DNA of 64,000 bases from Octopus bimaculoides (lineage: Eukaryota). The translations under genes and the position numbers were made by a program. Below are positions 13,735 through 58,215 of the stretch, in pieces. The DNA is taken from the NCBI RefSeq assembly GCF_001194135.2, contig NC_068990.1:54151898-54215897 (forward strand). The letters run 5' to 3'. A model generated the notes under the pieces. That model did not search any database. It saw only the letters and a program-made list of their open reading frames with translations, and was not told where the DNA came from. Within the stretch, counting starts at the first letter, position 1, and every line of letters begins with the position of its first letter.

Positions 13735-15412
13735 CTAAAATTAAACAAACAAATCAAATTTGTTACTTATTATTATCTCAGACTTTGAGTTATTAATAAT
13801 AGTTTGGTAAATTATTTGGGAGAAGTGATTTTGATATTTTAGAGCTTTAACAGCTCTAAAATGAAGATGTATTATTACTGATAGCAATTTAATGTTCATA
13901 ATTCCTTGCAGCAAACTGTATATAAAGGGATTAAACATACGATTACATAAATACATGTTTCATTTTTTGAGTAAGAAATAACTTTTAAAAATGGATCTTA
14001 TATATCATTGCTATTATGTAAAAGTGTCATAAGTCCAAAATGTTGCTTTTTCAGAAGATGAAAAAATAGTTTCACCATTCCATAGCAAAATCTGACAATT
14101 TTTGATATCTTGGCATCTGAAGCAGTTGGAGATATGATAGTTTGACCAAAAGAACCAGCTATTGCAAGCAAAAATAAATATTGAAAAAATAAAAACGCAT
14201 TTGGTCAAACTTGGACATACGACAGTTTGACATAATAGCGAAGGAAGGAAGGGAGGGAGGGAGGGATGTATGTATGTATAGACACAATAATGACAGTATG
14301 GTGTGCAGAAGCTCATTTTGCAACCATATGGTTTCAGGTTCAGTTCCTCTGTACAGCACTTTGGACAAGTGTTTCCTATTATAACCCCAGGCCAAACAAT
14401 GCCTTGTGAGTAAATCTGGTTGATGGAAACTGTGTTGAAGTCAATTTTATGTTTTTCTTGATGTTTTTGTTTGTTCCACACAGACATCACTTGACAACCA
14501 GTGTTGGTTTATTTACATCCCTGTACTGTAACTTAGCAGTTCAGCATAAGAGATGGATACAATAAGTACCAGATTTTAAAAATAAATATTGGGGTCAATT
14601 TGTTCAACTAAACTTTAGTATGGCTGCAATCCAATGATTGAAACAATCTAAAAATAAAAGATATATAACTATATATAATATGAACTGTTGAACATATTAG
14701 ACAGTGAAACTACTGTAGAAGCTAATTACCTTAGATGCACAGGCCAGGAAGTCAGACTAACAAAGAAGAGATATACTACCAACTATATTAGTAGATTATT
14801 GTTAGACTACATAGTGCACCTACTTCTGTTTTGGTTTTCTAAATCAAAACTCTAAGATATTAACCAATAAATTTCATCAAACCATTAAGTCATCACCTCA
14901 CCTTTATAATATCAGTATATTGCTAGTATTATTCAATCAACCTTGAAGTCGATGGAATAATTAAATACTAGTGCACCTACTCATACATAATTTAACTTCG
15001 AAATTCTAAAGACATACATCTGAGAGGCAGGCTCTTAACAACACTTGCCGATCACTGGTCACAATTGAATTAAATCCTTGCATTAATTTTTCTCAACCAT
15101 TACTTTAAATACACTCCGCTTCTGTCAACTTACTGACCATGCAGTGCCCTCTATCAAAACCTATATGTTATATGTAACTCTTCTATCAATTTCTTATCTG
15201 ATCTTATTTTCTGCCTCAAGTTGCACATCTGCAAGAATTCAAACTGAATGTTAACATCATTTACCTATGATTATTCCTTAGTCTTTGAAGGCCTGAAAAT
15301 GCTATGAACTTGCACAATCTCTTCCAAAAGTAATAAAATATAGTCTTGTTCACTACCATTTGTGTAAAACTCTACAATAAAAGAATTTTGGAAAAAATTG
15401 TTCAAATCTTAC

Positions 15413-16033
15413 CTTGAGGTTTTAATGAAGAATCATCAATATAACAGTGATCTAACAGAAATTTGTGTTTGGGACATGATGTAACTGGCAATGATTGGAT
15501 GGACTCGGTCACTTTTGGGAAAAAAGGATTCTGTGGTGTCAAATGAGGATTTTGAATTAGAAGAGGAACTTCAGCTGGTGGTGTAAGAGGTACTACAGTG
15601 GGTGCAGCACACTGAAGTAAATTGATGGTGGGTTGTGTGATGGTAACAGCAATAGGTGTGGTGACTGGAAGTTCAGGTGGTGAGCTAATGGAGACAACAG
15701 GAAGTGGTACAGGACAAGAAAGTCTGTCAGACCGAGTTAACTGGGTCAAGGCATCAACAGCATCAGCAGTAGGGTTAGAATATGATGAAGTGTCACAAGG
15801 AGTCTGTGTTACAGGTGGAGCTCGAATTGTTCCACGGTGGAGCTGTAGTAATGTATTGGCTACTTCACTATCGCTGATCAAAGTTTCAGAACTGTCGGAT
15901 TCAGAAAGGCTATTACAAGACATGGAAGAATCCACTGAATGGTTTCTTTTTGGAGGGCTCTTTGGTCTGATTTCTCTATAGAGAGATTTTTGTTTGTCAT
16001 CTTCTTTATCTTCATTAAATGGACAATTTTTCT
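15413..16033 (-). CDS. IRF1/2: IRF1/2-like, Ser/Pro/Thr-rich central exon
   Basis: Lies within ORF 15402-16058. Acceptor tttttgtttatttacag| at 16034; donor CAA G|gtaaga at 15412; 621 nt, phase 1/1, keeping the frame from the previous exon. Confidence 0.88.
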
Positions 16034-17959: not shown

Positions 17960-18115
17960 TGTTACAAAAGAATTGGTAAACTTTGTAAGCATTCGTACCA
18001 CCCTTATGGTTTAAATCAGAGAGTTCTTTGCAATCGGGTAAACTGTTTAAGGCACAGCGAAATGTTGCTTTAAAGCGTTTTGTGTTGGGCTTGTCTTCTG
18101 TTGGTACAAACCTGC
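17960..18115 (-). CDS. IRF1/2: IRF1/2-like, coding exon for the C-terminal half of the DNA-binding domain (not in the ORF track)
   Basis: Hand translation GRFVPTEDKPNTKRFKATFRCALNSLPDCKELSDLNHKGGTNAYKVYQFFCN aligns to IRF2 [50 protein letters not shown]. Acceptor ttccattgcag|; donor A|gtgagt; 156 nt, phase 1/1, in frame with both flanking exons. Confidence 0.95.
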
Positions 18116-21195: not shown

Positions 21196-22313
21196 ATCAT
21201 CATCATCATCATCGGTGTTTAAAGTCTGCTTTCCATGCTAGCATGGGTTGGATGATTTGACTGAGGACTTGTGAAACCAGATGGCTACACCAGGCTCCAA
21301 TCTGATTTGGCAGAGTTTCTACAGCTGGATGCCCTTCCTAACGCCGACCACTCAGAGAGTGTAGTGTTTGCTTTTACGTGCCACCGGCATGAAGGCCAGT
21401 CAGGCGGTACTGGCAACGGCCACGCTCAAAATGGTGTATTTTATGTGCCACCCGCACAAGAGCCAGTCCAGGGGCACTGGCAACAATCTCTCTCGAAAGT
21501 CCTTACACATGCCGCGGGCACAAGTGCCAGAAAGGCGACGCTGGGCACAGGTGCCTTCACGATTTCGCTTTTNNNNNNNNNNNNNNNNNNNNNNNNNNNN
21601 NNNNNNNNNNNNNNNNNNNNNNNNNNNNNNNNNNNNNNNNNNNNNNNNNNNNNNNNNNNNNNNNNNNNNNNNNNNNNNNNNNNNNNNNNNNNNNNNNNNN
21701 NNNNNNNNNNNNNNNNNNNNCTTGCCGGGTCTTCTCACGCACAGCATATTTCCAATTGGCAGAGTTTCTACAGCTGGATGCCCTTCCTAACGCCGACCAC
21801 TCAGAGAGTGTAGTGTTTGCTTTTACGTGCCACCGGCATGAAGGCCAGTCAGGCGGTACTGGCAACGGCCACGCTCAAAATGGTGTATTTTATGTGCCAC
21901 CCGCACAAGAGCCAGTCCAGGGGCACTGGCAACAATCTCTCTCGAAAGTCCTTACACATGCCGCGGGCACAAGTGCCAGAAAGGCGACGCTGGGCACAGG
22001 TGCCTTCACGATTTCGCTTTTCCCAATAAGTCTTCGCAAGCTGAGTTTCGTGTCCAATGGAGGAGACGACGTTGGCATGGGTGCCAATCGTTGAATTTAA
22101 ACTCAACTTCGATTTCACTTGCCTCAACAGGTCTTCGCAAGTAGAGTTTAGTGTCCAATGAAGGAAGGTACGCATAAGTGGACTGGCTGAGGCCTTAGAT
22201 TTAGGTNNNNNNNNNNTACGCATAAGTGGACTGGCTGAGGCCTTAGATTTAGGTCTCACTTGGCTTGCCGGGTCTTCTCACGCACAGCATTTGGCAGAGT
22301 TTCTACAGCTGGA
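21195..22313 (-). mobile_element. RTE 3' UTR segment, tandemly reiterated around N-gaps
   Basis: Tail at 21195; 21307-21572 is repeated exactly at 21756-22021, with a third start near 22290. Confidence 0.8.
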
Positions 22314-34806: not shown

Positions 34807-35025
34807 CAGTGTGTTCAGCCCATTTTACAAACAAATTGGCATCATTTGGTGTCCAGTTTTGGCTAGAACCATGCTTCCAAGGAATGCGGAAGATTTTCTT
34901 CTTTTTATCAATCCAATGCAAGCCTGGAATGTCTCCAAGATTCAGAAGTCTGCTCAACCAGGGTCGCATACGTTCACGTTCCACAGGGCGTACTCCTCTC
35001 CGTTTAACAGCTGGTTTGGCAATCT
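34807..35025 (-). CDS. IRF1/2: IRF1/2-like transcription factor, coding exon for the N-terminal half of the IRF DNA-binding domain
   Basis: Translates ..IAKPAVKRRGVRPVERERMRPWLSRLLNLGDIPGLHWIDKKKKIFRIPWKHGSSQNWTPNDANLFVKWAEHTG, matching the IRF2 N-terminus (MPVERMRMRPWL..IPGLKW..IFQIPWMH..W..HTG). Acceptor ttatttgacttacag| at 35026; donor G|gtaagt at 34806; 219 nt, phase 1/1. Confidence 0.96.
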
Positions 35026-36959: not shown

Positions 36960-38815
36960 GTGGTCCATTCACTCACAGCATTCTCCCCACTTTCATCCAC
37001 CTTCCAGAAACTGGCTAGAAGACAACACTTCCCTCTCTACCCTTATTTTCTTTTTCAAGTGAAATTTGAAGAAGTTCATCAGGGACTGGCCGAAGAGAAA
37101 AGTGTTTGTCTTCAGCCCTTTCAATCTCCTCCACCGTACAACTTCTTTCACCATGGCCACCAGGCATTTAAACACTTCCTTTCCTTCCTGGTTAAAGGAA
37201 AGTGGCAGGGCGATCTTCACGATGGATTATCCATCCCAGACGCGACATCAGGTGTTCGACATAAACCAACATAAACCCAGCAATGGTCAGACACTGGACA
37301 GGCACATGCAGGACTGTTTTGTCATCCTGCGCACATCTCAGACATGACTAGTTGACGGCACTTCTGTGCCTGTAAAGTTTATTTTGAACAGGCAAAGCTC
37401 CCCAGTAGCACTGCCAANNNNNNNNNNNNNNNNNNNNNNNNNNNNNNNNNNNNNNNNNNNNNNNNNNNNNNNNNNNNNNNNNNNNNNNNNNNNNNNNNNN
37501 NNNNNNNNNNNNNNNNNNNNNNNNNNNNNNNNNNNNNNNNNNNNNNNNNNNNNNNNNAGCGGCTAGCTGATCTTCGATGCCCAAGGTCTCCCCAAGAACG
37601 TCATCCCACTTTTCCTCCACTAATCTTTTACAAAAAGCTAAAGTGGATGTTCCACCTATCGCACCATCCAATTGGCTGAGGACTGAGTGCTTGAAGACAT
37701 TCCACTTTCCAAATGCTGCCCTTGGTCTGTTTTACTCAGGACTGCATTGTCACCACTATTATTTGATTTATACGAATTTTTGTCATCAGTTTTGGATTCA
37801 CCATTACCTTCGAGCCTATTTTTATTTTCATTTTGACTCTTCTGCTGTTGCTGCTGCTGATATTTCGTGCTATTCTGGTCTACCTTTATTTTGTGTCGTG
37901 ACAGTCAATGCATGTTCATTAAAGAAATACGTGTCTGGCAAACAGTGACCACACCTGTTCACTGTCAAGGAAGCACTGGAGATATCATAGCCTCAGTGCA
38001 TGTCTGAGCATCATCAACCCAGATCACCAAGAAGCAGGTGCTAACAGCAGATAGACTGCCTGAATATCAGGACATGTCCCTTCCACAAGAAGGAGAGTAT
38101 ATGCTCCAGCGTAATCAGACAATGGCCAAGACAAGGCATGACAGTCAAGCAATAATAGATGACCTCTGCTTGACCTTTCAGGGATAGCTTTTTCTCGGCC
38201 TGTTTCTGAGTGAAAGTAGTCACCCTGCTCACTACCTCATCCCAGCTTTTGTCCATCTGGAGGTCCAGACTAAACCAGACCCCAAGCAATTTAACTAATT
38301 CATCCATCCAGTGCCCAATAATGCAGTTGGACAGCATGGACTTGCTTCTCAAGGTGCTAAGCCCACTGATTTTTCCTGGTTAATTGTCACTCCTGAAACC
38401 ACCCCATAGTCCCTAAGAGCAGTGTCAATCATTTCTATGTGTTTAAGATCCGACACCACTATGGTGACGTCATTGGCATATGCCAATACACATCTCCCAC
38501 ATCCTAGGTCATGTGGGATGCCTCTCAATGCCTCCATTTTATGTAGTAGTGACTCAAGAGTTAGTACACACAAGAGACGAGAGTGGGCAACCTTGCTGGA
38601 CCGAGCACATAATGTTGAACAGCTCTGAGAGGTGAACATTCACTCTGACCACTGAACAGATGTCGCTGTGCATTGCAGCAATCCAGCCCCTGAATACAGG
38701 TCTGAAAACCAGCTGCCTTGAGGACTGCTGCCAGGTATAGATAGTCAACCCTATCAAAAGCTTTAGACTGATCTAAATTGATCAGAGTCCCATCTGTGCC
38801 AAGTTTTTTAGCCAC
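36960..38815 (-). mobile_element. Tx1/L1-clade non-LTR retrotransposon ORF2 fragment
   Basis: Broken frames LINLDQSKAFDRVDY, SVQQGCPLS, LAYANDVTIVV, VKLLGVWFSLDLQMDKSW..KLSLKG, and C-terminal VRWRRLKGLKT..FFKFHLKKKIRVERE. Confidence 0.8.
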
Positions 38816-38819
38816 TCTC

Positions 38820-39335
38820 TCAATTATGTATCACATGAGGTGGAGGTTGTCATGGATGGATCTCTACGGGGTGCCTCCCCTATTAGATTCCTGACAAGAA
38901 GTGATAACCTCGTAGCTAACACCTGGGCCAAAATTTTGAACTCTACTGAAACGCTTCCGAGAAGCAATCAAAGAAAAATGGCCGGGAATGCTCACCAGAG
39001 GAGTCCTTTTTCATCACAACAATGCTCCAGCCCACACCTCAGTAGTTGCCATGGCAACAATCCAGACATAGCCCCCTCTGACTTTCATCTATTCTCAAAA
39101 ATGAAAAAAGGCCTGGCTGGTCACCATTTTGCCAGTGACTATAACGTCATAGACGTGGTAGGAAGTTTCTTGGAGTCTCAAACAAAAGAGTTCCTCTATG
39201 CCGGGAAAATGGTGCTTCAGCACCGCTGGAGAAAGTGTTCAGCCATCAAGGGGGAATATGCTGAAAAATAAATCATCAGCAGTTTTGTACTATGTTTTAT
39301 TTTTTTGAGGCTCAAGACTTTTCATAAACCCCTCG
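38820..39335 (+). mobile_element. Mariner (DD34D) 3' fragment
   Basis: PDIAPSDFHLFSKMKKGLAG..LQHRWRKCSAIKGEYAEK*; ends ..ttcataaacccctcg|TA. Confidence 0.85.
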
Positions 39336-39359
39336 TATATTCAGAATCCATATTATAAA

Positions 39360-40740
39360 GGTCACCTACCTCTGTGGAAGCTATCAACTAATTCTAGCTT
39401 TCCAACCTGGCATTGGATGGAGTCTATTTTCTGCACATTTTAGTGTTTATTGTACTAGTGCACCTTCCACACACAAAAACTATTTTCCCTGTTAACCTTC
39501 CCCTGATATTGCTGCACCTCTTATGTGTCCATAGCTTACATTAGATACATCTTATGGAGTTTCTACTTATACCTTTTCTACAGGTCGAGCAGGGCCATCT
39601 ACCTGAAAGGATTTGTGATATGTTCGCTTTCCTACTTACTAAGACTTTGGTTTTTGCTAGATCAACTTTAAGGGCTTTTGATTCTAGACCTTGCTTCCAC
39701 ACCTGAAATTTCTTCTCTAGTTCTGGAAGTAATTCGGCTATCAGAAGGTCATCAGCATAGAGGAGCTCCCAGAGGTGTCCTGTCTTAAATTCCCCTGTTA
39801 TCGCCTGGAGAACTATGATGAACAAGAGGGGGGGAGCACTGAGAACTGATCTTTGGTGAACCCCTACTTCTACCTTGAATTCATCTCTATACTCATTGCC
39901 AACCTTTACCTTACTGACAGCATCCTTATACATGGCTTGTACAACTCTCACCAACCACTTGTCTATCCCTAGTTAAAGGCTTTCTCCATGTCAACAAAAG
40001 CCAAGTATAGAAGTTTTTTTTTGGCTAAGTACTTCTCCTACAGCTGTCTTACAAGAAATATAGCATCAGTGGTGCTTCTCTCTTGCACAAAACCAAACTG
40101 TATCTCATCTAGACTAATTCTCCTCCTAATTAGTTCAGTTATGACCCTCTCCGTAACTTTCATCACCTGATCCAACAATTTGATACCTCTGTAATTATTT
40201 CTGCCTAAGGTGTCACCGTTACCTTTGTAGCAGTTGACTATGATGCTACAACACCAGTCATAGGGTATGACTCCCTCATGTACAACCAGATTATCTATAC
40301 GGGTAACTAGATCATAACCCACACTGCCAGGTAACCAGACTGTCCATTTCCCATGAGTTCTCTACATTTAGCAGCCTTCCATAGTGGCACTTCCGAGCCT
40401 CCTTTTTTGCAGAGCCACTAACTGCAAGTGAACCCTCATCCATGCAAATAGACTTCTCTCCAACATCACAATTTCCCCTGGCACACTCTCTTGCAAAACA
40501 AAGCACTTCAAGCAGCTGGCCCTCACACTGCAAAACATTAGTAAACTTCTTCCTTTCTAGCTGCCTGATAAAGGTTTTGCAGCCACCACCCTTCCAGTTC
40601 TTCCAAGCCTGTTTCTTTGCTCTAATAGTCCTGTCAACTACATTGTACCACCACCATGTCACCTTAGGCCTGGTTGGGACTTTGCAACAGCCACAAATTT
40701 GGTCTGTGGCTCTCAGCAAATTGTTCCCCACCTCGTAGGA
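39360..40740 (-). mobile_element. RTE-clade LINE internal fragment
   Basis: NYRGIKLLDQVMKV..QFGFVQERSTTDAIFLVRQL; GVHQRSVLS..LLYADDL. Confidence 0.9.
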
Positions 40741-41001
40741 ACAAACACAAGACCTGAAATCTGGGAGAGGGTTAGTTGATTACATTGACCTAAGTGCTTG
40801 ACTTGTACTTTATTATAATGATCTCAGAAAGAGAAAGGCAAAGTCAACTAGCTGAGGGAGAAAACAGTTGACTTTATCAACCTCAACAGGTGACTGGTAC
40901 CTTTTTTTTATCAACCCCATAGAAGGATAAAAGGTTAAAGTCAACTGCTAATGAGAACAAATAAACACCACAACACATTCTGTTCTCTGCAACAAGAACA
41001 C

Positions 41002-45834: not shown

Positions 45835-47320
45835 TCATCATCATCATCATCGTTTAACGTCCGCTTTCCATGCTAGCATGGGTTGGACGATTTGACTGAG
45901 GACTGGTGAAACCGGATGGCAACACCAGGCTCCAGTCTGATTTGGCAGAGTTTCTACAGCTGGATGCCCTTCCTAACGCCAACCACTCAGAGAGTGTAGT
46001 GGGTGCTTTTACGTGTCACCCGCACGAAAACGGCCACGCTCGAAATGGTGTCTTTTATGTGCCACCCGCACAAGCCAGTCCAGGGGCACTGGCAACGATC
46101 TCGCTCGAAAATCCTACAGGAGCCNNNNNNNNNNNNNNNNNNNNNNNNNNNNNNNNNNNNNNNNNNNNNNNNNNNNNNNNNNNNNNNNNNNNNNNNNNNN
46201 NNNNNNNNNNNNNNNNNNNNNNNNNNNNNNNNNNNNNNNNNNNNNNNNNNNNNNNNNNNNNNNNNNNNNNNNNNNNNNNNNNNNNNNNNNNNNNNNNNNN
46301 NNNNNNNNNNNNNNNNNNNNNNNNNNNNNNNNNNNNNNNNNNNNNNNNNNNNNNNNNNNNNNNNNNNNNNNNNNNNNNNNNNNNNNNNNNNNNNNNNNNN
46401 NNNNNNNNNNNNNNNNNNNNNNNNNNNNNNNNNNNNNNNNNNNNNNNNNNNNNNNNNNNNNNNNNNNNNNNNNNNNNNNNNNNNNNNNNNNNNNNNNNNN
46501 NNNNNNNNNNNNNNNNNNNNNNNNNNNNNNNNNNNNNNNNNNNNNNNNNNNNNNNNNNNNNNNNNNNNNNNNNNNNNNNNNNNNNNNNNNNNNNNNNNNN
46601 NNNNNNNNNNNNNNNNNNNNNNNNNNNNNNNNNNNNNNNNNNNNNNNNNNNNNNNNNNNNNNNNNNNNNNNNNNNNNNNNNNNNNNNNNNNNNNNNNNNN
46701 NNNNNNNNNNNNNNNNNNNNNNNNNNNNNNNNNNNNNNNNNNNNNNNNNNNNNNNNNNNNNNNNNNNNNNNNNNNNNNNNNNNNNNNNNNNNNNNNNNNN
46801 NNNNNNNNNNNNNNNNNNNNNNNNNNNNNNNNNNNNNNNNNNNNNNNNNNNNNNNNNNNNNNNNNNNNNNNNNNNNNNNNNNNNNNNNNNNNNNNNNNNN
46901 NNNNNNNNNNNNNNNNNNNNNNNNNNNNNNNNNNNNNNNNNNNNNNNNNNNNNNNNNNNNNNNNNNNNNNNNNNNNNNNNNNNNNNNNNNNNNNNNNNNN
47001 NNNNNNNNNNNNNNNNNACAAACAAAAACTAACTTGCTAGTTAACCTGCCTTTGATGTTGCTGCACCTCTTATGTGTCCATAGCTTGCACCGGGTACATC
47101 TTATAGAGTTACTACCTACTCCTTTTCTACATACTGAGCAGGGCCATCTACCTGAAGGGGTTTGTGTTTTATCTACCTTCCTACTTATTAGGATTTTGGT
47201 TTTAGCTAGGTTGACTCTAAGGCCCTTCAATTCTAGACCTTGCTTCCACACCTGAAACTTCTCCTCTAGTTCTGATAGTGACTCCGCAATTAGGGCAAGG
47301 TCATCAGCATAGAGGAGTTA
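45835..47320 (-). mobile_element. Young RTE-clade LINE 3' part spanning an N-gap
   Basis: WKQGLELKGLRVNLAKTKIL..WPCSVCRKGVG.. on one side of the gap; CpG-intact 3' UTR and (CAT)n tail on the other. Confidence 0.88.
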
Positions 47321-48049
47321 TGCATGTGAATTATTATCAGGTAAATAAATAGCTGAAGACATTCCTAAGATTCAGTCTTTGGCGACGTAACTACAACAAT
47401 ATCGGTACTTATACGAAAATTCTCATTCTTACAAAGACAGAATTAAAAAAAGTTGTACTGCAACTTTCAGAGAGTATACGTGTGTGCGTATATCACATAT
47501 AGCTACAGAAACATTTGAATTAACAAAGAAGCCTATACGCGATAGTTTGATCTGCTTGAAATAACAGCTAAATCAACCCAACCCGATGATTCTTCTTCAT
47601 TATTATGGTTGTAAACCAAAACTAAATAAATAAAATTTTAAAAAAAACACAGAAACCATAAAAACGGAATAGAATCATGAACATGATTAAATTTTCTAAA
47701 GAAATATACCAATATGTCACTAATGCAGCATTTAATCGTATGTCGTCTTAACTATATAAAATAGGTACAGAAATTAAACAAAATCAATATATATTAACTT
47801 TGTTTAATACTAGTCCCTCCTCCACCAGATCGTTCTTGTATAGGCGAAGGAAGGGACAAGACATTTTGCCTGCAACTCTCAACAACAACAACAGCATCTA
47901 AAGTATTGCAATTATACAGAAACTTTAGTCTTGTAATTTCCCGAAGTTCCGTCTACGAAATTTAGTTTCCCTGAGTTCCGTCTAATGTATTTAGTTTGGT
48001 AATGAAATTAGATCCTGGTGACACTATTCCACATTTTCACCACATTATT

Positions 48050-48740
48050 TCATTAAATAATCTAATTCCATTTTTCTGAGAAATGTTTACTGTCTTTTGT
48101 ACTAAATGTTTTTAAAAACGGGAGGGGTGTAGACATTCTAGGAATGATACCCCCATCTAATTTTTTCCAGACATGTAGAATCTCATTATTTTGTAGGCTT
48201 TTTGTTAAGGCAATGGGAGCATCATCTGACGGGCATTTGGCTGCTATTACTAGCAATCCAGCGACATGGACGCTCAAGTCTGCCCCGAACGAGCAGACCT
48301 TATAATGAAAGCACTCCAGCTGTGAGTATCCTGCCTTTTTTCCTAAGTGCAGGAACCCAGGACTACACTAATCAACGTATCCTCCTGTGGTAATGTGTCT
48401 TCAGAGATTTGGCTTCTATTTCCAGCATAACAAACGAACACGTACAGGTTGCCTTATTGGCACATTTGAGGCTCCTGGAGCTTTGTTGGTCAAGATCTTC
48501 ATCCGGGAACTAAAAAAAAAATCAACCAGCCTGGTGGGTGTTAACAAGTGTGTGAAAAACGAATATGAAAAAAATAAAATGAGCGCTGACGACCCTGGGG
48601 TGGGGAGGGGGCTTTCGGAAAATTCACAAGATCCGATTTTTCCGTCATAACTTCGGCTACAATGGATATATATTGATTTTTTTTTTACAGAATCCTACGT
48701 TTTTGGTTATGGAGGATCCGATTCTGAAAAAAAATTCAAA
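48050..48740. mobile_element. Unclassified CpG-rich insertion, possibly a DNA transposon relic
   Basis: Compositionally distinct, with a stop-free minus frame of about 100 codons and a cataacttcgg..gaggatccgattctgaaaaaaaatt subterminal-like end running into an N-gap. Confidence 0.3.
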
Positions 48741-49671
48741 NNNNNNNNNNNNNNNNNNNNNNNNNNNNNNNNNNNNNNNNNNNNNNNNNNNNNNNNNNNN
48801 NNNNNNNNNNNNNNNNNNNNNNNNNNNNNNNNNNNNNNNNNNNNNNNNNNNNNNNNNNNNNNNNNNNNNNNNNNNNNNNNNNNNNNNNNNNNNNNNNNNN
48901 NNNNNNNNNNNNNNNNNNNNNNNNNNNNNNNNNNNNNNNNNNNNNNNNNNNNNNNNNNNNNNNNNNNNNNNNNNNNNNNNNNNNNNNNNNNNNNNNNNNN
49001 NNNNNNNNNNNNNNNNNNNNNNNNNNNNNNNNNNNNNNNNNNNNNNNNNNNNNNNNNNNNNNNNNNNNNNNNNNNNNNNNNNNNNNNNNNNNNNNNNNNN
49101 NNNNNNNNNNNNNNNNNNNNNNNNNNNNNNNNNNNNNNNNNNNNNNNNNNNNNNNNNNNNNNNNNNNNNNNNNNNNNNNNNNNNNNNNNNNNNNNNNNNN
49201 NNNNNNNNNNNNNNNNNNNNNNNNNNNNNNNNNNNNNNNNNNNNNNNNNNNNNNNNNNNNNNNNNNNNNNNNNNNNNNNNNNNNNNNNNNNNNNNNNNNN
49301 NNNNNNNNNNNNNNNNNNNNNNNNNNNNNNNNNNNNNNNNNNNNNNNNNNNNNNNNNNNNNNNNNTTAATGGATACATCTTAGTAATAGAAGTACTAGAT
49401 TCCCTGTTTGTGGTAGACGGAAATAAATGGGGTGGTCACGACGGGGCTACTAAAATAGTGATGATTAGAGATAGAGATAAGAAAAAGTCCTTGCTGAATA
49501 AAGTAAAAATAGAAGAGAAAGACAGTTTGCAGGAGCGAAGGAGAGGAGATCAACAAGTATAATAATTGACTATAAGTATGAGATATATGAATTATGTGTA
49601 GCTATGTGCGAGTGCGCGGACAAATGTACTTAAGTTTCTTATGTTGTAGCATATGTGAAGAAGGGATGAAT

Positions 49672-49713
<42 letters not shown>

Positions 49714-49728
49714 GAGTTGCTGGTTATT

Positions 49729-49742
49729 AGTTTCAGTTTCAC
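49729..49742 (-). promoter_or_regulatory. IRF-E/ISRE-like element 2
   Basis: Plus strand AGTTTCAGTTTCAC (ISRE consensus AGTTTCNNTTTC); minus strand GAAACTGAAACT is a full IRF-E match; about +85 to +98 from the predicted TSS. Confidence 0.55.
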
Positions 49743-49796
49743 TAAAACAACCAGTCAGCCAGAAAAGCAGGCAGACGGTAGACAGGGGAAATAAGA

Positions 49797-49812
49797 GAAG
49801 TGAAAGCGAAAC
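49797..49812 (+). promoter_or_regulatory. IRF-E/ISRE-like element 1
   Basis: GAAGTGAAAGCGAAAC fits G(A)AAA(G/C)(T/C)GAAA(G/C) with an upstream AAGT; about +15 to +30 from the predicted TSS. Confidence 0.55.
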
Positions 49813-49822
49813 ACAACAAGAC

Positions 49823-49855
49823 AACTGACAAAAAGAGACAAAATTTAGTTTTATA
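49823..49855 (-). promoter_or_regulatory. TATA + Inr core promoter oriented toward the IRF gene (predicted +1 about 49826)
   Basis: Minus strand has TATAAAA at 49855-49849 and TCAGTT (Inr consensus TCAKTY) at 49828-49823; the first T of the TATA box sits at -29. The region retains CpG dinucleotides. Confidence 0.6.
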
Positions 49856-52554
49856 AAGTGGTAGGACTGGTACGAGCAATAAACATTCCAGAGAGACGAC
49901 GATGATATAGGAGGGTGAGTGGTGTTGACTTTGTAAAATGAATGTAAATACATTCGTCTGTCTCATTCTCAGCAAACACTACAAGGGAACTAGTGGCAAA
50001 CTGGTTGCAGTCGGAGTTGGCAAACAAAACTCTAAATCAAAGTTTATAAAATGTCACAAGTATTGCCGTGAAAACATTCTAACGTTTCGAGTATCTGAAA
50101 CGTTAAGGGTTCGTTTTATTTCCTAAAATGGTACTAAAACAACATCGACACAGACGGAGACCCCCCCCCCAAAAAAAAAACATGATCCCGTTTAATAATT
50201 TCCTTAGTCGCTCTCATCCAACAACACCCATACATCTCAAGGAGAAAATCCCCTACAAATATTCCCAAAGAAACTTTACATTCATTAAAGCATCACAAAG
50301 ACTGGAATTTTTCTCACTTGAGTCCCACATTAGCTTAGGTCTGAAGATACGACCTACATTCCCATCTGTTGTATCCATCACCAGTAGTCCTCCCTGTCTC
50401 TAACTTCTGGCCTATCATTTATAACAAAATCTCTGGTCTTTTTATACAGCCACAGAATGACCTTTCATCTTTGAAAACCTCTACTCACCAAATTATATAT
50501 GATGCTCTACCGATAGTGACAACCAGGAAATATTAATGTGCTCGCTCCACCTGCTAAAATTACAAACCAAATCTAACGCAATTAGATGTAGTCGTTCCTA
50601 CATCTACTATGCCTGAAAATAAGATGAGATGGTCACGGCTGTAACGCCCATGGTTTACCCAAACCCGCCTAATGTCACTCAGTTAACACAATAGTCCAGA
50701 TTGGGAGGGTTTCTTAAGATTAGAAGCACGCACGGCCTTCACTTTGTCAGACGAGTGAGGAGAAATGGTGGAATAGTTTTAAAAATAACGAAGTCATAAG
50801 AAACTAGTTTTGGTGGAGAAAAGTTAAAAATGAAGCGTGAGAAGGGAAAGGAGAATAAAACAAAACAGCCAGGAGATAAAAGATTTTTAAAGATAAAATC
50901 TAATTATAAAGAAACTAGAAAAGTTAGTTTGGGGCAGGAGATAAGAGAAAAGAAAAAGAACAAGAGAGAGGAAAAAGAAACAAGGGAAAGGATAGAGGGG
51001 AAGAGAGGATAAGTAAAAGAGAGGAAAGAGAAAGTACAGAAAAAACGAGAGTGGGAGGAAAAGGAAAGAGAAAGTAGAGCGAAAGAAAAGTTGTGGAAAA
51101 GTTAATGTGGGGAATGGGAGAAGGACATAAAATAAATAAAAAGTTTTACACTGAAATGCAAATAATTGTATCGGAATTTCAACACACTATTTTCATATAA
51201 TTTGATAAAGATAAGTCATTATACAAGAAACATAAGAAAAACCAAATTTATTTGGATATATCGTCTTAGGAGAGAGACTAATGGCGCAATGAAAAAATAC
51301 CCTTCTTCGTCCGAGTTCATTAATAGAGCTTATTAAAAGAGAAAAATATCCACATACAACTAGTTTTGTCTCTTTATTCGCCAAGGTGGTAGTGGCTTTC
51401 ATCACATTCCACTTGGGTTAGCAGAGTAGAAGCAAAAAAGAAAGAGGATGAATAACAAAATAGAAATACTATCGTCCTTACAAGTTCAAGAGTGGGGGGG
51501 GGGTATAGAGAAAGAAATATTAACGAGAGATGAAAGATAAAGAGGAGGATTCAAATATACAGTGCGAGTGCGTATGTGTATGTATAAACACACACATTAT
51601 AAGATATAGAGTAAACAGATGAGACGTAGGGAGAGAGAAAGTTGAACAGTTGAGGGTGGCAATATGTATAACCCAAATCTAGTTTTTGTTGCTTGTTTTT
51701 AAGTTTCTTTCATTAGAGTAAACAACTCAATGAACAATTTACGTTTTATGACTGACAGGCCACAACACCAACCACACTTATAAATGAAACACACACAAAC
51801 GTGTGTGTGTGTAGTATTAGACAGAGGAAACTGGTAGTGATATCTACGTCAGCAAAATTTTTCAACTTTTAGTGGGGAAAATTTGTAAATTTGGAATGAT
51901 TCACGCCGTAGTTTTTTTTTAAGTTTGTGAAGTTTTCTAAATTGATAAAACGAAGCATTTTAATAAGGCGGTGGTGGTGTTAGTATTTGTATGAGAAAGA
52001 TCACAACGTACTTAACAGAGAAACTCGGAGTATTAGTTCGGTCGGGGGCTGTGGTAGAAGACACTTGCCCAAGGTGCCACGCAATAGGACTGAACCCGAA
52101 CCATGTGATTGAGAAACAAACTTCTTAGCATACAACTATACCCGAGCCTATAGCGACATGTATCTCCACTTCAATAACTATGGAGTGAAGGATATTTGAG
52201 AAGACTGAGCAAAAAAAATCAACACTGATCTGTGACAAATGGAAAATTATCGAGTCAAATATGTTGTGAAGGGGGGGGGGTTGCAAACATATACACACAA
52301 CTTTTGTAGTTTTATAGAGGAAGGGGTGTGTTGTGATAGTTATACCGTTCGAAAAGATATAAACGGTATACTTTAATATACAAGTCTTATTAAAGGAGGT
52401 CGTAAAGCAATTAATTAGATCTACATGTTTATTATCGTCCTGGTAGCTAGCACCAACAGAAAGAAAAAGGACAGCAACAGCCAAGTAGGGAAGTAACAAG
52501 TGAACTTGTCATTCAGGGCTCCTCACCTTCTATCATTTTCCCTTTAAAACTCGA

Positions 52555-52745
52555 GCAACAAGGAGACTTCTTCGTGGTCGCTCGACATGCTAGAAATAGT
52601 AGCCTAATAGCCCTCATATCACATTTTACTGCCTTAAATAAGTAAAGAACACATCATAGTGTAATCAACATACTCTGAAGATGAGATGGTCATGTACCAA
52701 AGGAGGTCTACTCGATCAAGACTGACCTGGGGCTAAACAACTTTG
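52555..52745 (+). repeat. Dispersed repeat family (gaaacctctac..ctgctagaaatagcagccaaat..ctgacctggggctaaacaac)
   Basis: Related copies at about 3780-4010, 5155-5345, 18300-18470, 35370-35500, 42030-42180, 50500-50650. Confidence 0.65.
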
Positions 52746-54227
52746 ATGAACGAACTTCGACAATAGCGAACTAAACATTTCAAGGACATTATCATCATCA
52801 TAACGACCGTAATAAAGACGATCTCTTTAAAAACATAAAAATATTTTCTAAACGCCTTCGCCCCTCTAAGTAAAATTATCGATCTAATCTAATTGTATCC
52901 CTTCCACTAACTAATCAAAACTCTCTTTGATAGTTTTATTTACCTCAATATGATACACTGCCAAACTAATTCACTCCTCAAGTGTATGGTTAAATATCCA
53001 CACCCTACGTTTTCCTTCGCAGTCCCATGTCTCATGGGATACTGTTTCATACAACTGAATGTAATTTTAAAATATTTTTTCACCTTTAATTTCAACTTTT
53101 CTCCCTGCACCTTTCTCATGAAGTATTTAACTTCGAAGGCCAGCTACACCAAAACTCGGTTTTCATTTATCGTTCAGCTGTATAGTCTTCCTAAGATCTT
53201 ATTCTAAGAACATCATTCTTCTAACACTCGTCTCAAAAAGCTCGATATAATTTTCTAAAATTTATTACTCTTAAAACAGAACAAATATATTTAATTGCAG
53301 TGTGTTTTCTTAATGCGAAAAATACTTTGACAGAGATCTTAGGTAGAACTTCCACAACAGGTCAAATAATGAAAAGAGGCTGGGGGAATATAAAAAGAAA
53401 AAACTGGTAGGAAATATAGCAGAATAGTTAGTAATAAAGATTTTTTATATATTAGCACAAGTCTACAAATTTGTGGAAGGACACTGAATAAACCTGAATG
53501 TATTAAATATGAATAGAAAAATGTTATGTTCAACAGCAAATAAGGGAGAGTAATTTCACTTTTAGGGAGGGTACTAAAAACGAGAATAATATCCCAAACA
53601 ATAAAAATTATGTCCATAAGTTTTATTCACTTAAAAACACCACCATATCTATAAAACATACCTACACAAGTGTGCCCCCCCAGCGACTTTGTTTCCTTAT
53701 AGATTCTTCCGTTTACATCGGATTTTTTTCTTTTTGAGAATATGTTTTATATATGGCTGGGAAGTGTAGTTTCGGAAAATTCACACGAATTGGATTTGCT
53801 TCCTCATAAATTTCAGAATAATGGTTATTTTTTAATGAAATTTTCTACAAATACCTTTCAGTATGAGTAGATTACCATTATATCGGAATTGAAAAAAAAA
53901 AGGTAGGCTCACACACATAGATACTAACACAGATCACATATAATACACAAAATGAAACTTAAAGTTTCTAAGAAAAAAATTGTGATGTGTGTCAGTATGT
54001 ATGTTCGCGTGCTCACCATTTTTCTTTTCACATTAAATTGCCATACCGTAATTTTACACACTTTGAGAACTTCTCTCACAACCACGGAATAAATTTTTTC
54101 ACAACGAATACAGATATAATTGGAATTTACACCATCTGAAGCATATTTGTAGAAAATTTCATCAAAAATTATCCGATTCTCTGGAAGTGATGAGGAAACA
54201 CTCGTGTATGTATGCCATATACATACA

Positions 54228-54293
<66 letters not shown>

Positions 54294-54879
54294 ATTAACC
54301 AGAGAACCATATATAGTTGTATAGCGTACCCTAACACCATCTTAGCGCTATTCATATACAAAATATAATGAAACTAAATGTTTGCTTGCAGTTGTTTTAC
54401 TTTCTGTTTCACCAACTATTTGCCATACAATCATGGTCGATTACAATAAAGTTGTTAAAACTTTCTGAAACAAAGATAATGGAGGTGGGGGAAACGTACA
54501 TTCATTCACACACTGAACACACACACATATATAATCACAAGCTCTACACACTGTCAACTTGTACCTATTAATATTCTAAAGAAATACTTTTCATGATTCA
54601 CATTAAGAACATTTTACACGCTAACTTGCTGGATAACTTTATTTCAAGCAAGACACGTTAAGACAACTTTCACAAAGTGTACACACGTACACTGAAAACT
54701 GTAGATCACAACTATGTCTATGATATANNNNNNNNNNNNNNNNNNNNNNNNNNNNNNNNNNNNNNNNNNNNNNNNNNNNNNNNNNNNNNNNNNNNNNNNN
54801 NNNNNNNNNNNNNNNNNNNNNNNNNNNTAACAGGTGTATATGGTAATTACCTGGTGTATATAGTAACTAGATGTATATA

Positions 54880-55280
54880 TTAAGTTGTTTAAAAAATGCT
54901 GTCTAATTTTTAGAAAACATTTTTCAAATTCGACTTAACATGTTATTTTTGTAGTGTTTGAGACAAAATTTTACATGCTTAATAATCGATGTGTACTCTT
55001 TAATAAACTTTTGTGGATTTCTTTCAGAATATCATTTTGAAGTATAGAAATCCTTAATTTCAAACATGGTAAAAGAAGAAATGCATTCACTTTTTTTTGC
55101 ATGAATTCAAGCTTGGACATAATGCTTCCCAAACAGCCACCTCAACAGAGCATGGGGTGAATTGTCTACTAGTGATCAGAGGGTAAAACAGCGATTTCAG
55201 AGATTCTGTTGTGGGAATGAGTGCCTTGAAGATCAAGAAGGTAGAGGACATCCATCCAACTTTGATGAAAACAATATTAA
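54880..55280 (+). mobile_element. Mariner 5' fragment (Hsmar1-like N-terminus) interrupting a minisatellite
   Basis: Hand translation from about 55067: MVKEEMHSLFLHEFKLGHNASQTAT..RAWGELSTSDQRVKQRFQRFCCGNECLEDQEGRGHPS, similar to mariner FEFKMGRKAAET..WFKKFCKGDESLEDEERSGRP. Confidence 0.75.
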
Positions 55281-55587: not shown

Positions 55588-56032
55588 TGATGATCCTTTC
55601 CTACCCTTGCAAAGAAATTCCCTAATAACAAGAGTTTGTCCCTCGGCGGCATTACTATCCTGCCACTCTTGCCTTCACCTACTCTCTTCTGCAGACATGG
55701 GAGTATGATGTAGCCCTTGGAACCTTCAGATTTGTCAAATTGTCCAACCCATGCCAGTATGGAAAGCAGACATTAAATGATGATATGTTGGGTGGGAGAC
55801 TTGGGGGAGATAGAGATAGATGTACAGTGATAGAGATAGATGTCAGATGTACATTGGGGTAGCTGTAGTGAGTGGGGGACAAAGGTTGTAAGGAATTTGT
55901 CAATGGCAGATATGCTAGAATGATGAGAATGATAGCAGATAAGACAGAAGTGTTAAAGATAAGGTAATGGCAGTCTTAAGATGTTGCTCAGAGGTGGCGT
56001 GAAGATAAACAGGGTACAAACAAAGGAGTTAC

Positions 56033-58215
56033 CATCATCATCATCGTTTAACATCCGTTTGCCATGCTGGTATGGGTTGGATGGTTCAACTGGGGTCTGG
56101 GAAGCCAGAAGGCTACACCAGGCTCCAGTCTGATCTGGCAGTGTTTCTACAGCTGGATGCCCTTCCTAACGCCAACCTATCCAAGAGTGTAGTGGGTGCT
56201 TTTTACATGCCACCAGCACAGGAGCCAGAAGGGGCTGGCAACAACCACAATCAGTTGGTGCATTTTATGTGCCACCAGCATGGAAGCCAGTCAAGGCAGC
56301 ACTGGCATCGGCCATGTTCGGATGCTGCTTTTTATGTGCCACCAGCATGGGTATCACAACTACAATTTCCATTTGATTTTGGTTTTGATGTACTTGACTC
56401 AATAGGTCTCTTCAAGCATGGCATGTCACCCTACAAGCCAAGGTACTTTTGAGTGGGCTGGTTATGCAACACTGGTTACAGCTGTGAACTCACTTTATTT
56501 GCCGGGTCTTCTCAGTCACAGCATATCTCCAGAGGTCTCGGTCTTTTGTCATTGCCTCTGTGAGGCCCAACGTTTGAAGGTCATGTTTCACTGCCATGTT
56601 TCACTGCCGTGAAGCATGGCAGTTCGCACACATGCATCGTAAATCTACTTTTGACTCTGAGTGAGAGGCCCTTTGTCACCAGTAGGGGTGGGAGCTTTCT
56701 GAACTTTGCCCAGGGTATTCCTATTCTAGTGGTAACACTTTCTGAGCATCCACTCCCAAAGCAGACTTGGTAACCTAGGTAGCGGAAGCTATCAACTACT
56801 TCTAGTTTCTCTCCCTGGCATGTGATGGAATCTGTTTTCTGAGCATCTGTGGAGTTTATTGCCTCTGTGCATCTGCTGCACACGAAAGCTATCTTCCTGG
56901 TTAATCTTCCATTGATGTTGCTGCACCTCTTATGTGTCCATAGCTTACACCGGGTACATTTTATGGAGTTTCTACCAACACCTTTTCTACAGATCGAACA
57001 GGGCTACCTACCTGAAGGGGTGTGTGATGTGTTTGCCTGCCTACTTACAAGAACTTTGGTCTTTGCAAAATTGACTCTAAGGCCCTTTGAATCCTTGCTT
57101 CTACACCTGAAATTTCTAGTTCTAGTAGTGATTCTGTTGAGGGCCAGGTCATCAGCATAGAGGAGCTCTCAGGGGCAATCTGTCTTGAATTCCTGTTATT
57201 GCCTGGAGGACTATAATGAATAAGAGGGGGCTGAGGGCTGATCCTTGGTGGACCCCTACTTCTACCTGGAATTCTTCACTATACTCATTGCCAACCCTAA
57301 CTTTACTAATGGCATCTCTGTATAGGGCCTGTATAGCCCTTGTTAACCATTCGTCAATCCCTAGTTTCCACATCACCCACCAGATAATGGATCAGGGAAC
57401 CCTATTAAAGGCTTTCTCCAAGTCCACAAAAGCCAAGTATAGGGGTTTATCTTTGGCTAGGTATTTCTCCTGCAGTTGCCGTACAAGGAATATAGCAACA
57501 GTAGGGCTTCTACCTGGCACAAAACCTAACTGCATCTCATCTAAGCAGACTCTCTCCCTAATTATTTGGGCTATGACCCTCTCCATGACCTTCATCGCCT
57601 GATCCAGCAGTTTGATACCCTGTAGAAATATTTCTATCTAAAGCATCACCTTTACCCTTGTAGCAGTTGACTATGGTGCTGCTACGCCAGTCATTGGGTA
57701 TGACTCTATCATGAACTACCTGGTTTACAATATGGGTGACTAGGCCATAGCCCACACCACCAGTTGTTTTAAGCATCTCAGCAGTGATTCCTGATAGGCC
57801 GGGGGCCTTTCCTGGCTTCATACCCTTAATTGCTTTATCTACCAGGGTGCTATCTATTTGGATTGCTGGTCCCTCTACTGGGTCAATATTTGGCAGGCTC
57901 TTTTCCTCCCAATCATTCTCCACATTCAGCAGTCTTTCATAATGACTTCTCCAGGCCTCTTTCTTTTCTAAATCATTAAAAGCAAGTGCACCATCATCCA
58001 TGCAGACATATTTCTCTCCTGTGACACCACAATTTTCTCTCATACACTGTCTTGCAATCCAAAATACTTCAGTTCTTTGGTCCTCATGTTGCTAGACATT
58101 GGCAAACTTCTCTTCTGCTTCGCTCTTGGCTATGTATACCTGTCGCCCAGCCTCCCTTCTGGCTATCTGGTATAGTTCCCTGCTACCCCCACCCTTCCAG
58201 GCTTTCCAGGCCTGC
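56033..58215 (-). mobile_element. RTE-clade LINE, 5'-truncated, with (GAT)n tail
   Basis: YERLLNVEN, KAPGLSGITAEML, QLGFVPGRS..LQEKY..AFVDLEKAFNRVP, GVHQGSALSPLLF, YADD region; 3' UTR ends in a catcatcat tract on the plus strand. Confidence 0.92.

What the first reader, a model, noticed from the sequence alone, without database searches (positions are those of the whole stretch)
49729..49855. IRF gene appears to carry its own binding sites: TATA/Inr promoter followed by two opposed ISREs
Seen: on the minus strand, TATAAAA (49855-49849) and TCAGTT Inr (+1 about 49826) at canonical spacing, then GAAAGCGAAAC (49802-49812) and AGTTTCAGTTTCAC (49729-49742) about 70 bp apart in opposite orientations, all pointing into the IRF1/2-like gene 15 kb away. 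Established: vertebrate IRF2, IRF7 and IRF9 promoters have IRF-E/ISRE sites that drive feedback loops, and molluscs lack a recognisable interferon orthologue. Inference: an IRF autoregulatory, ISG-like circuit operating without interferon.
Basis: partly seen in the sequence, partly recalled or inferred. Interest (0 to 1): 0.8.

Follow-up and report, generated by a model that had tools for sequence, protein, structure and literature searches.

The report
IRF-site pair upstream of octopus IRF gene
Two strong binding sites for IRF immune transcription factors lie beside a TATA box in an unmethylated-looking DNA island just upstream of an octopus-type IRF1/2-like gene, so a self-regulating loop is plausible, but nothing here shows that transcripts start there or that the protein binds.

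Summary
All four motifs are at the stated coordinates. The two GAAA-repeat sites are unlikely to be chance. GAAANNGAAAC occurs 5 times in the window against 0.7-1.2 expected. A pair within 100 bp arises for 2 of 252 composition-matched control motifs. The TATA+Inr pair alone is at chance level (1 seen, about 0.86 expected), but it sits 14 bp from the site pair.

The gene is a real IRF1/2-type gene under purifying selection, and its recognition helix is intact.

New indirect support for the link comes from composition. The cluster lies mid-way in an 8-kb island (47-55 kb) with CpG o/e 0.62-0.79, against a window median of 0.19. That island abuts a CpG-depleted, strand-skewed minus-strand unit (about 16-48 kb) holding the IRF exons.

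Against the exact model:
- The DBD exon needs an upstream ATG exon in phase 1.
- No usable ATG or splice donor follows the proposed start before a 625-N gap.
- The TATA also reads on the + strand, with both sites upstream of it.
- A better ATG/donor candidate lies at 52.5 kb.
- No orthologous promoter sequence could be retrieved.

Verdict: probably an IRF-responsive module in the gene's 5' domain. The start site and autoregulation are unproven. It is a new member of a known kind.

The parts
49729..49742 (-). Site 1: GTGAAACTGAAACT, a perfect ISRE / IRF-E consensus
   Evidence: It is the only match to RNGAAANNGAAACY and to GAAA[GC][TC]GAAA[GC][TC] in the window.
49795..49812 (+). Site 2: GAGAAGTGAAAGCGAAAC, three GAAA-type hexamers. 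From memory, its first 12 nt equal the PRDI element of the IFN-beta promoter.
   Evidence: It forms an inverted repeat with site 1, 12/14 matched (I4).
49849..49858 (.). Two-faced TATA element TTTTATAAAG: TATAAAA on the minus strand, TATAAAG on the + strand
49823..49828 (-). Inr-like TCAGTT, A at 49826, 29 nt from the TATA box
   Evidence: It is the only strict TATAAA+TCAGT pair in the window, but about 0.86 is expected by chance.
49912..49920 (+). Donor-like AGG|GTGAGT on the + strand, 60 nt past TATAAAG (rival orientation)
   Evidence: 6.9 bits, equal to the real exon A donor at 6.8. There are 21 sites of 6 bits or more on both strands of the window.
50156..50165 (-). NF-kB consensus GGGGGTCTCC, about 330 bp upstream of the proposed minus-strand start
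   Evidence: It is the only GGGRNWYYCC match in the window, where 2.7 are expected window-wide.
47018..54727 (.). CpG-retaining island, inferred to be unmethylated in the germline. It is bounded by assembly gaps and a LINE fragment.
   Evidence: CpG o/e is 0.62-0.79 and TG/CA o/e about 1.0, against a window median of 0.19 and TG/CA 1.3-1.6.
48741..49365 (.). Assembly gap (625 N), 460 nt downstream of the proposed start. It could hide the end of exon 1.
49677..49710 (.). (GA)17 microsatellite directly beside site 1
52527..52536 (-). Best candidate for the missing ATG exon end: gggaaaATGATAGAAG|GTGAGG, phase 1. It would give MIEEIAKPAV...
   Evidence: Donor is 7.7 bits. It is not significant alone: 4 candidates in 29 kb.
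34807..35025 (-). IRF DBD exon A. Acceptor ttacag|AG, donor ACTG|gtaagt. It opens in phase 1 and encodes IAKPAVKRRGVRPVERERMRPWL...AEHTG.
   Evidence: It is 98% identical to the related species, against 80-88% in introns.
17960..18115 (-). IRF DBD exon B (RFVPTEDKPNTKRFKATFRCALNS...YQFFCN)
   Evidence: (P0008, 98% identity).
15402..16033 (-). C-terminal exon C. Its acceptor is in phase with exon B, and it has no Pfam domain.

Best explanation
The segment 49729-49858 is an IRF-responsive control module. It consists of two inverted high-affinity-type IRF sites (one perfect ISRE, one triple-hexamer IRF-E) next to a TATA element, with a lone NF-kB consensus 300 bp away. It lies in the unmethylated 5' regulatory island of the IRF1/2-like gene, which is transcribed on the minus strand.

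Proposed mechanism: IRF proteins dock on the GAAA repeats and raise or damp transcription of the IRF gene. These proteins could be the gene's own product, its paralogues, or both. The result is a feedback or feed-forward loop like those of vertebrate IRF2 and IRF7.

The module acts in one of two ways. Either it is promoter-proximal to an inducible TATA/Inr start at 49826, or it is a first-intron enhancer below a start near 52.5-52.9 kb.

Shown:
- The motifs exist and are non-random.
- The gene is a constrained IRF1/2-type gene with an intact recognition helix.
- The island and the transcription-unit signals are present in the sequence.

Inferred:
- The methylation state.
- That the module serves this gene.
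- Who binds it.
- The direction of the effect.
For: - Motifs and their statistics.
- The only strict TATA+Inr pair of the window lies 14 bp from the site pair and points at the gene.
- The only kB consensus of the window lies 300 bp away.
- IRF domain: Pfam E = 4e-35. Best solved relatives are IRF2 (1.3e-36) and IRF1 (1.4e-32), with R, C, N, S of helix 3 conserved.
- Exons are 98-100% identical to a related species, against 80-88% in introns. There is an in-frame 3-nt indel.
- CpG o/e is 0.62-0.79 across 47-55 kb, against a median of 0.19 elsewhere.
- Gene-body CpGs are hypermutable: 21 of 36 differ as CG<->TG/CA, against 10% for other C/G sites.
- The same depletion is seen in the related species' contigs, but not at an unrelated octopod locus.
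- In Octopus bimaculoides methylation marks gene bodies. A large gene class is unmethylated at the TSS (PMC9476566).
- + strand skew is negative from 16 to 48 kb (13 of 16 bins) and about 0 outside.
- Mollusc and shrimp IRFs bind ISRE. The shrimp Vago4 ISRE lies in a 5'UTR (PMC13524488; PMC4602278).
Against: - There are no transcript data.
- Exon A needs an upstream ATG exon. No legal ATG/donor follows 49826 in the visible sequence.
- Three assembly gaps lie between the cluster and exon A. The island's edges coincide with gaps, so mis-scaffolding cannot be excluded.
- In the minus-strand reading both sites are downstream of the start (+14 to +97), which is unusual.
- The TATA+Inr pair alone is at chance level.
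- The nearest full-length relatives show no GAAANNGAAAC: an octopod paralogue with 10 kb of upstream DNA, and transcripts with 250-nt 5'UTRs.
- No orthologous promoter could be fetched, so conservation is untested.
- Transcription-linked skew is established for mammals and is only extrapolated here.
Confidence: 0.45

Rival explanations
1. The module belongs to a + strand promoter of a different, unseen gene. Read rightwards, both IRF sites lie 40-125 bp upstream of TATAAAG (49852-49858). A weak Inr (aCATTCC, A at 49885) and a good splice donor (AGG|GTGAGT, 49915) follow. This is the classical layout of an interferon-stimulated-gene promoter. The target would then be an ISG-like gene beyond 64 kb, or the promoter would be bidirectional.
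For: - The TATA is two-faced.
- The donor at 49915 scores 6.9 bits, the same as a real donor of this gene.
- No donor exists on the minus strand.
- The right flank (55-63 kb) is again CpG-depleted, as a second gene body would be.
Against: - No host-like coding exon is seen on the + strand from 49.9 to 64 kb, only transposon remnants.
- The implied first exon is only about 30 nt.
- The + strand Inr is weak and at the far limit of spacing.
- No positive skew appears to the right of the island.
Confidence: 0.15
2. Chance. This is a fortuitous cluster of short A/T- and purine-rich motifs beside a microsatellite, with no regulatory role. The reader found it because it was looking for IRF sites near an IRF gene.
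For: - TATA+Inr is at chance level. A loose definition gives 42 such pairs in the window.
- Site 1 is a two-unit tandem of AGTTTC next to a (GA)17 repeat.
- Other GAAA-repeat matches lie in a purine-rich tandem (50943-50992) and in a local repeat (19167-19347, similar to 20572-20784).
- A 23-base version of the pair finds about as many unrelated matches in metagenomes as chance predicts.
- Genome-wide, hundreds of such pairs are expected.
Against: - A pair within 100 bp arises for 2 of 252 composition-matched motifs and in 0.03% of local shuffles.
- It coincides with the only strict TATA+Inr pair, the only kB consensus and the only CpG island of the window.
Confidence: 0.2
3. Assembly or mobile-element artefact. 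Either contig 49366-54727 is mis-scaffolded into this locus, or the module is carried by a transposable element. In either case its nearness to the IRF gene means nothing.
For: - The CpG island starts and ends at N gaps. A LINE fragment sits at its left edge.
- The scaffold has 12 gaps in 64 kb.
- The two sites form an inverted repeat, like short terminal repeats.
Against: - The 1.2 kb around the cluster is unique in the window and in the related contigs.
- There is no target-site duplication around 49729-49812.
- There is no Rfam or tRNA-like match.
- Skew in contig 47018-48740 matches the gene body.
Confidence: 0.1

Closest known systems
Vertebrate IRF genes with IRF-E/ISRE in their own control regions (IRF2, IRF7; also IRF5, IRF9). 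Stated from established knowledge, not tested here.
   Same: An IRF-family gene has consensus IRF sites in its 5' regulatory domain. This would give the logic of a feedback or feed-forward loop.
   Different: In vertebrates the loop runs through interferon, JAK-STAT and ISGF3, and the sites are mapped by binding and reporter assays. Here there is no transcript, binding or induction evidence. In the proposed orientation the sites lie downstream of the start. The module is 14.8 kb from the first known coding exon.
IFN-beta PRDI/PRDIII and (AAGTGA)n hexamer repeats, the classical IRF1/IRF2 targets
   Same: Site 2 (GAGAAGTGAAAGCGAAAC) has three consecutive GAAA-type hexamers. From memory, its first 12 nt are identical to PRDI.
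   Different: No enhanceosome context is present: no adjacent PRDII or PRDIV. The single kB consensus is 340 bp away. The resemblance is recalled from memory, not computed against a reference.
Invertebrate IRF-ISRE axis: oyster CgIRF1/CgIRF8 to CgIFNLP, scallop CfIRF1/2, shrimp LvIRF to Vago4
   Same: Mollusc and crustacean IRFs bind vertebrate-type ISREs (PMC13524488).
   Different: In those cases the target is a cytokine-like gene, not the IRF gene itself. My searches found no report of IRF autoregulation in an invertebrate.
Octopus genes with a methylated body and an unmethylated TSS (class MP2 of Macchi et al. 2022, PMC9476566)
   Same: A CpG-depleted gene body abuts a CpG-retaining 5' island.
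   Different: Methylation here is inferred from CpG o/e and CpG hypermutability only. The island is wide (8 kb).

Membership tests
ISRE / IRF-E (IRF-binding DNA element) | Sequence matches RNGAAANNGAAACY or GAAA(G/C)(T/C)GAAA(G/C)(T/C) | tested here: met
   Site 1 matches both consensus patterns perfectly and is unique in the window. Site 2 matches GAAANNGAAAC and has a third hexamer.
ISRE / IRF-E (IRF-binding DNA element) | Occurs more often or more clustered than composition predicts | tested here: met
   5 sites against 0.69 expected in shuffles and 1.15 for permuted motifs. A close pair arises for 2 of 252 permuted motifs and in 0.03% of local shuffles.
ISRE / IRF-E (IRF-binding DNA element) | Conserved in orthologous loci | tested here: inconclusive
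   Orthologous DNA was not retrievable. Two exact ORF look-ups, two six-frame protein searches and one metagenome pattern scan gave no orthologue.
ISRE / IRF-E (IRF-binding DNA element) | Bound by an IRF protein and confers inducibility | not testable with these tools
   This needs EMSA, DAP-seq or ChIP, plus reporter assays.
TATA/Inr core promoter of the IRF gene | TATA box with an Inr 25-32 nt downstream, on the gene's strand | tested here: met
   TATAAAA, then 29 nt to the A of TCAGTT, on the minus strand.
TATA/Inr core promoter of the IRF gene | The combination is rarer than chance | tested here: not met
   1 observed against about 0.86 expected from motif counts. A loose definition gives 42. 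Only its position beside the IRF sites is unusual.
TATA/Inr core promoter of the IRF gene | A first exon with a splice donor (and the ATG that exon A requires) follows the start | tested here: not met
   No donor of 2 bits or more from 49826 to 47318 in the visible sequence. The ATG at 49645 has no legal phase-1 donor. 625 N could hide one.
TATA/Inr core promoter of the IRF gene | Transcripts start there and splice to 35025 | not testable with these tools
   No transcript of this gene is in the protein collections.
Autoregulated IRF gene (IRF2/IRF7 type) | The gene encodes an IRF with an intact GAAA-recognition surface | tested here: met
   Pfam IRF covers 1-104 of 105 positions, E = 4e-35. 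Helix 3 FRCALNS and His of WKH are conserved against IRF2.
Autoregulated IRF gene (IRF2/IRF7 type) | The IRF sites lie in that gene's own control region | tested here: inconclusive
   The CpG island and strand skew place the 5' end of the unit at about 47-48 kb, next to the cluster. The exon link is missing, and the + strand reading is open.
Autoregulated IRF gene (IRF2/IRF7 type) | The gene's own product acts on the sites | not testable with these tools
   Paralogues exist (P0018, P0020) and could be the binders instead.
IRF1/IRF2 subfamily (the gene) | DBD is closest to IRF1/2, with no IAD1 (IRF-3) domain | tested here: met
   IRF2 1.3e-36 and IRF1 1.4e-32, against IRF3/4 at about 1e-22. The C-terminal exon has no Pfam hit. 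Further 3' exons were not excluded.
IRF1/IRF2 subfamily (the gene) | Tryptophan pentad | tested here: not met
   Four of the five Trp are kept. The fifth (IRF2 W77) is Phe (KRFKATFRCA). Relatives P0018 and P0020 have Tyr and Phe there.

The most novel reading that the evidence does not exclude
A cephalopod IRF1/2-like gene drives or restrains itself through a pair of inverted IRF sites in its own unmethylated 5' island. That would be an IRF feedback circuit working without a canonical interferon or ISGF3, and so would suggest that IRF autoregulation predates the interferon system.
Probability: 0.2. Interest if true: 0.55.

Novelty: new member of a known kind. Interest (0 to 1): 0.38.

Why it matters
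If real, this would be the first mapped cis-regulatory module of a cephalopod immune transcription factor. It would also be evidence that IRF self-regulation is older than interferon. That would give a concrete element to mutate, and a reporter for antiviral signalling in cephalopods.

It is not a surprise, however. Mollusc IRFs are already known to bind ISREs, and vertebrate IRF genes are known IRF targets.

The useful practical result is where to look. The gene's 5' end is placed at 47-55 kb by CpG and skew signals, and there are two concrete start models to test (49826 and about 52.6 kb).

Tried and rejected
1. Fetching the orthologous promoter failed by every route.
- Exact look-up of ORFs 49639-49953(-) and 50128-50403(+) found nothing on record.
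- Six-frame translations of 49366-51200, and of 47560-48740 plus 51200-52420, searched against 5.8 bn proteins gave no hit at E <= 10.
- A metagenome scan for the site pair gave six contigs, none alignable to the window.

2. Looking for a full-length orthologue or transcript to read the N-terminus gave none, either in the 90%-cluster search or in 1.84 bn representatives.

3. A conserved upstream ATG exon within 1.9 kb of exon A was not found.

4. The MITE/TIR reading of the inverted sites was rejected because there is no target-site duplication.

5. A LINE or LTR promoter was rejected. The LINE piece at 47018-47317 is 5'-truncated and lies 2.5 kb away. The cluster is unique in the window.

6. 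No ncRNA or tRNA-derived element was found.

7. Comparing CpG retention in three LINE copies to test the island was uninformative, with 2, 3 and 3 CpGs.

Inspection of stop-free segments showed only transposon remnants to the right.

9. Paralogue promoters carry no GAAANNGAAAC.

10. Papers naming the related-species sequencing runs were not found.

Full report
**Observation.** Reading both strands of 49500-50100 confirms every motif at the stated coordinates.
- Minus-strand TATAAAA is at 49855-49849.
- Minus-strand TCAGTT has its A at 49826, 29 nt from the first T of the TATA box.
- + strand GAAAGCGAAAC is at 49802-49812.
- + strand AGTTTCAGTTTCAC is at 49729-49742, which reads GTGAAACTGAAACT on the minus strand.

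GAGAAGTGAAAGCGAAAC (49795-49812) holds three GAAA-type hexamers. From memory, its first 12 nt equal the PRDI element of IFN-beta. The two sites form a 14-nt inverted repeat, 12/14 matched, with 55 nt between the arms.

**Is it more than chance?**
- GAANNGAAAC-type counts: GAAANNGAAAC occurs 5 times in the window against 0.69 in dinucleotide shuffles.
- As a control on real sequence I scored all 252 permutations of the same nine letters. Their mean is 1.15 sites, only 2% reach 5, and only 2 of 252 (the true motif included) have two sites within 100 bp.
- Local shuffles of the surrounding 2 kb give such a pair in 0.03% of trials.
- The full ISRE and IRF-E consensus patterns each occur once in the window, at site 1.

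The TATA+Inr pair is different. It is the only strict TATAAA + TCAGT pair in the window. But 84 TATAAA and 163 TCAGT predict about 0.86 such pairs, and a loose definition yields 42. Its only weight is that it sits 14 bp from the site pair and points towards the gene. A perfect NF-kB consensus (GGGGGTCTCC, 50156-50165) is also the only one in the window.

**The gene.**
- Exon A (35025-34807, minus strand) and exon B (18115-17960) together encode a full IRF domain: Pfam E = 4e-35, covering positions 1-104 of 105.
- The best solved relatives are IRF2 and IRF1. The alignment starts at PVERERMRPWL, and the recognition helix FRCALNS is conserved.
- The fifth tryptophan of the pentad is Phe. The nearest full-length relatives have Phe or Tyr at that position.
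- A C-terminal exon (16033-15402) follows in phase and has no Pfam domain.
- Genomic contigs of a related species (Logan runs SRR11869391 and SRR11869384) are 98-100% identical in the exons and 80-88% identical in the introns. They carry an in-frame 3-nt indel in the N-terminal part of exon A. The gene is therefore real and under selection.

**The missing link.** Exon A opens in phase 1 with the coding sequence IAKPAVKRRGVRPVERER before the internal Met.
- An in-frame stop lies three codons upstream of the acceptor, and there is no ATG in between. An upstream exon ending ATG+3n+1 is therefore required.
- Downstream of the proposed start, the first ATG (49645) has only one phase-1 GT, and using it creates a TAG stop.
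- No minus-strand donor of 2 bits or more exists from 49826 to 47318 in the visible sequence. A 625-N gap begins at 49365.
- The best ATG/phase-1/donor candidate in the 29 kb upstream is gggaaaATGATAGAAG|GTGAGG at 52536-52527, with a 7.7-bit donor. It would give MIEEIAKP..., an N-terminal length like that of homologues.
- That candidate is one of only four, so it is not significant alone. If it is used, the IRF sites are intronic, 2.7 kb below exon 1.

**A rival orientation.** The TATA element TTTTATAAAG also reads TATAAAG on the + strand.
- Read that way, both IRF sites lie 40-125 bp upstream of it, which is the classical ISG layout.
- AGG|GTGAGT at 49915 scores 6.9 bits, the same as exon A's real donor.
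- Against this reading, the + strand Inr is weak and the implied exon is about 30 nt.
- No host-like coding exon is seen to the right, only transposon remnants.

**New indirect evidence for the link.**
- The window is strongly CpG-depleted: median o/e is 0.19 and TG/CA o/e is 1.3-1.6. The exception is one sharply bounded block, 47001-55000, with o/e 0.62-0.79 and TG/CA about 1.0. The cluster sits in its middle.
- In the gene-body alignment with the related species, 21 of 36 CpG positions differ as CG<->TG/CA, against 10% for other C/G sites.
- The related contigs are equally depleted (0.16-0.29). An unrelated octopod locus is not (0.4-1.2).
- In Octopus bimaculoides methylation marks gene bodies. 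A large gene class is unmethylated at the TSS and promoter (PMC9476566).
- Independently, the summed GC and TA skew on the + strand is negative in 13 of 16 two-kb bins from 16 to 48 kb, and about zero outside. That is expected for a minus-strand transcription unit running from about 48 kb to the last IRF exon.

Caveats:
- The methylation state is inferred.
- The skew rule is established in mammals and only extrapolated here.
- The island's edges coincide with assembly gaps and a LINE fragment.

**What could not be done.** No orthologous promoter sequence and no transcript of this gene could be obtained by any route. Conservation and the start site therefore remain untested.
- The nearest full-length relatives show no GAAANNGAAAC. 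These are a paralogue in octopod assembly GCA_054771915.1 with 10 kb of upstream DNA, and transcripts with 250-nt 5'UTRs.
- The metagenome scan returned an unrelated eukaryotic contig family carrying the same 84-nt site pair, about 0.5 kb upstream of a RecQ-like helicase gene. By my estimate from motif composition and an assumed collection size of about 600 Gb, roughly one chance match is expected, so I treat it as coincidence.

**Comparison and verdict.**
- IRF/ISRE regulation is already documented in molluscs and shrimp, including an ISRE inside a 5'UTR.
- IRF genes that carry IRF sites are well known in vertebrates.
- My literature searches found no report of IRF autoregulation in an invertebrate.

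My probabilities:

| Explanation | Probability |
|---|---|
| IRF-responsive module in this gene's 5' domain | about 0.45 |
| Chance | 0.2 |
| + strand promoter of another gene | 0.15 |
| Assembly or mobile-element artefact | 0.1 |

Within the first explanation, a start exactly at 49826 is about as likely as an intronic-enhancer arrangement. Autoregulation by the gene's own product is about 0.2 overall. This is a new member of a known kind, of moderate interest.

Noticed in passing
window 47001-55000: A sharply bounded CpG-retaining island (o/e 0.62-0.79, TG/CA about 1.0) in a window whose median CpG o/e is 0.19. Its edges fall at assembly gaps and a LINE fragment.
   Followed up: yes
window 16000-48000: + strand GC+TA skew is negative in 13 of 16 two-kb bins and about zero outside. 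This fits a minus-strand transcription unit spanning the IRF exons.
   Followed up: partly
window 31859-31978: A 120-bp intronic block is 97-100% identical to the related species, where neighbouring intron is 80-90%. It is not coding-like and is AT-rich with TAATTA-type motifs. It may be a conserved non-coding element.
   Followed up: partly
window 19275-19297: A second pair of opposed IRF-like sites, ACTTTCACTTT|GAAAACGAAACT, lies in the large intron 1.2 kb above exon B. It sits inside a local repeat (19167-19347, 73% similar to 20572-20784) whose other copy keeps only AAGTGAAAGT.
   Followed up: partly
window 50156-50165 (-): The only NF-kB consensus (GGGGGTCTCC) in the window lies about 300 bp from the cluster.
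   Followed up: partly
window 52527-52536 (-): ATGATAGAAG|GTGAGG is the best in-phase ATG plus donor candidate for the missing first coding exon. It sits at the CpG o/e peak of the island (0.9-1.3).
   Followed up: partly
window 18062-18080 (-), exon B: The fifth tryptophan of the IRF pentad is Phe (KRFKATFRCA). Relatives P0018 (Tyr) and P0020 (Phe) share the change and the motif SLPDC.E, suggesting a cephalopod-specific IRF1/2-like clade.
   Followed up: partly
L004, L005, L007, L008 (e.g. L008 5492-5575): Four metagenome contigs of one unknown eukaryote carry AGTTTCAGTTTCAC and GAAAGCGAAACT with exactly the same 84-nt span as the window. The pair lies about 0.5 kb upstream of a split RecQ-like helicase gene (DEAD, Helicase_C, RecQ_Zn_bind). 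The flanks are unrelated, and the pair overlaps a 108-aa ORF. It is probably a coincidence.
   Followed up: partly
window 18878-19180, 21271-22094, 45906-46124, 56009-56449: There are several copies of one SINE-like repeat (translation ...GYTRLQSDLAEFLQLDALPNA...). The same family occurs in octopod assembly GCA_054771915.1 (L010) at 70-88% identity, which ties the window to octopods.
   Followed up: partly
window 38000-40750 (-), 47018-47317 (-), 56580-58090 (-); 38840-39271 (+), 61300-62460 (+), 8446-9142 (+): Three copies of a non-LTR reverse-transcriptase element are about 80% alike. There are also mariner/Tc1-like transposase remnants, some of them inside the putative first intron.
   Followed up: partly
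window 50943-50992 and 50800-51150: A purine-rich tract with a 19-nt tandem repeat (AAGAGAAAGGAAAAAGAAC x2.6) produces several weak GAAA-repeat matches by composition.
   Followed up: partly
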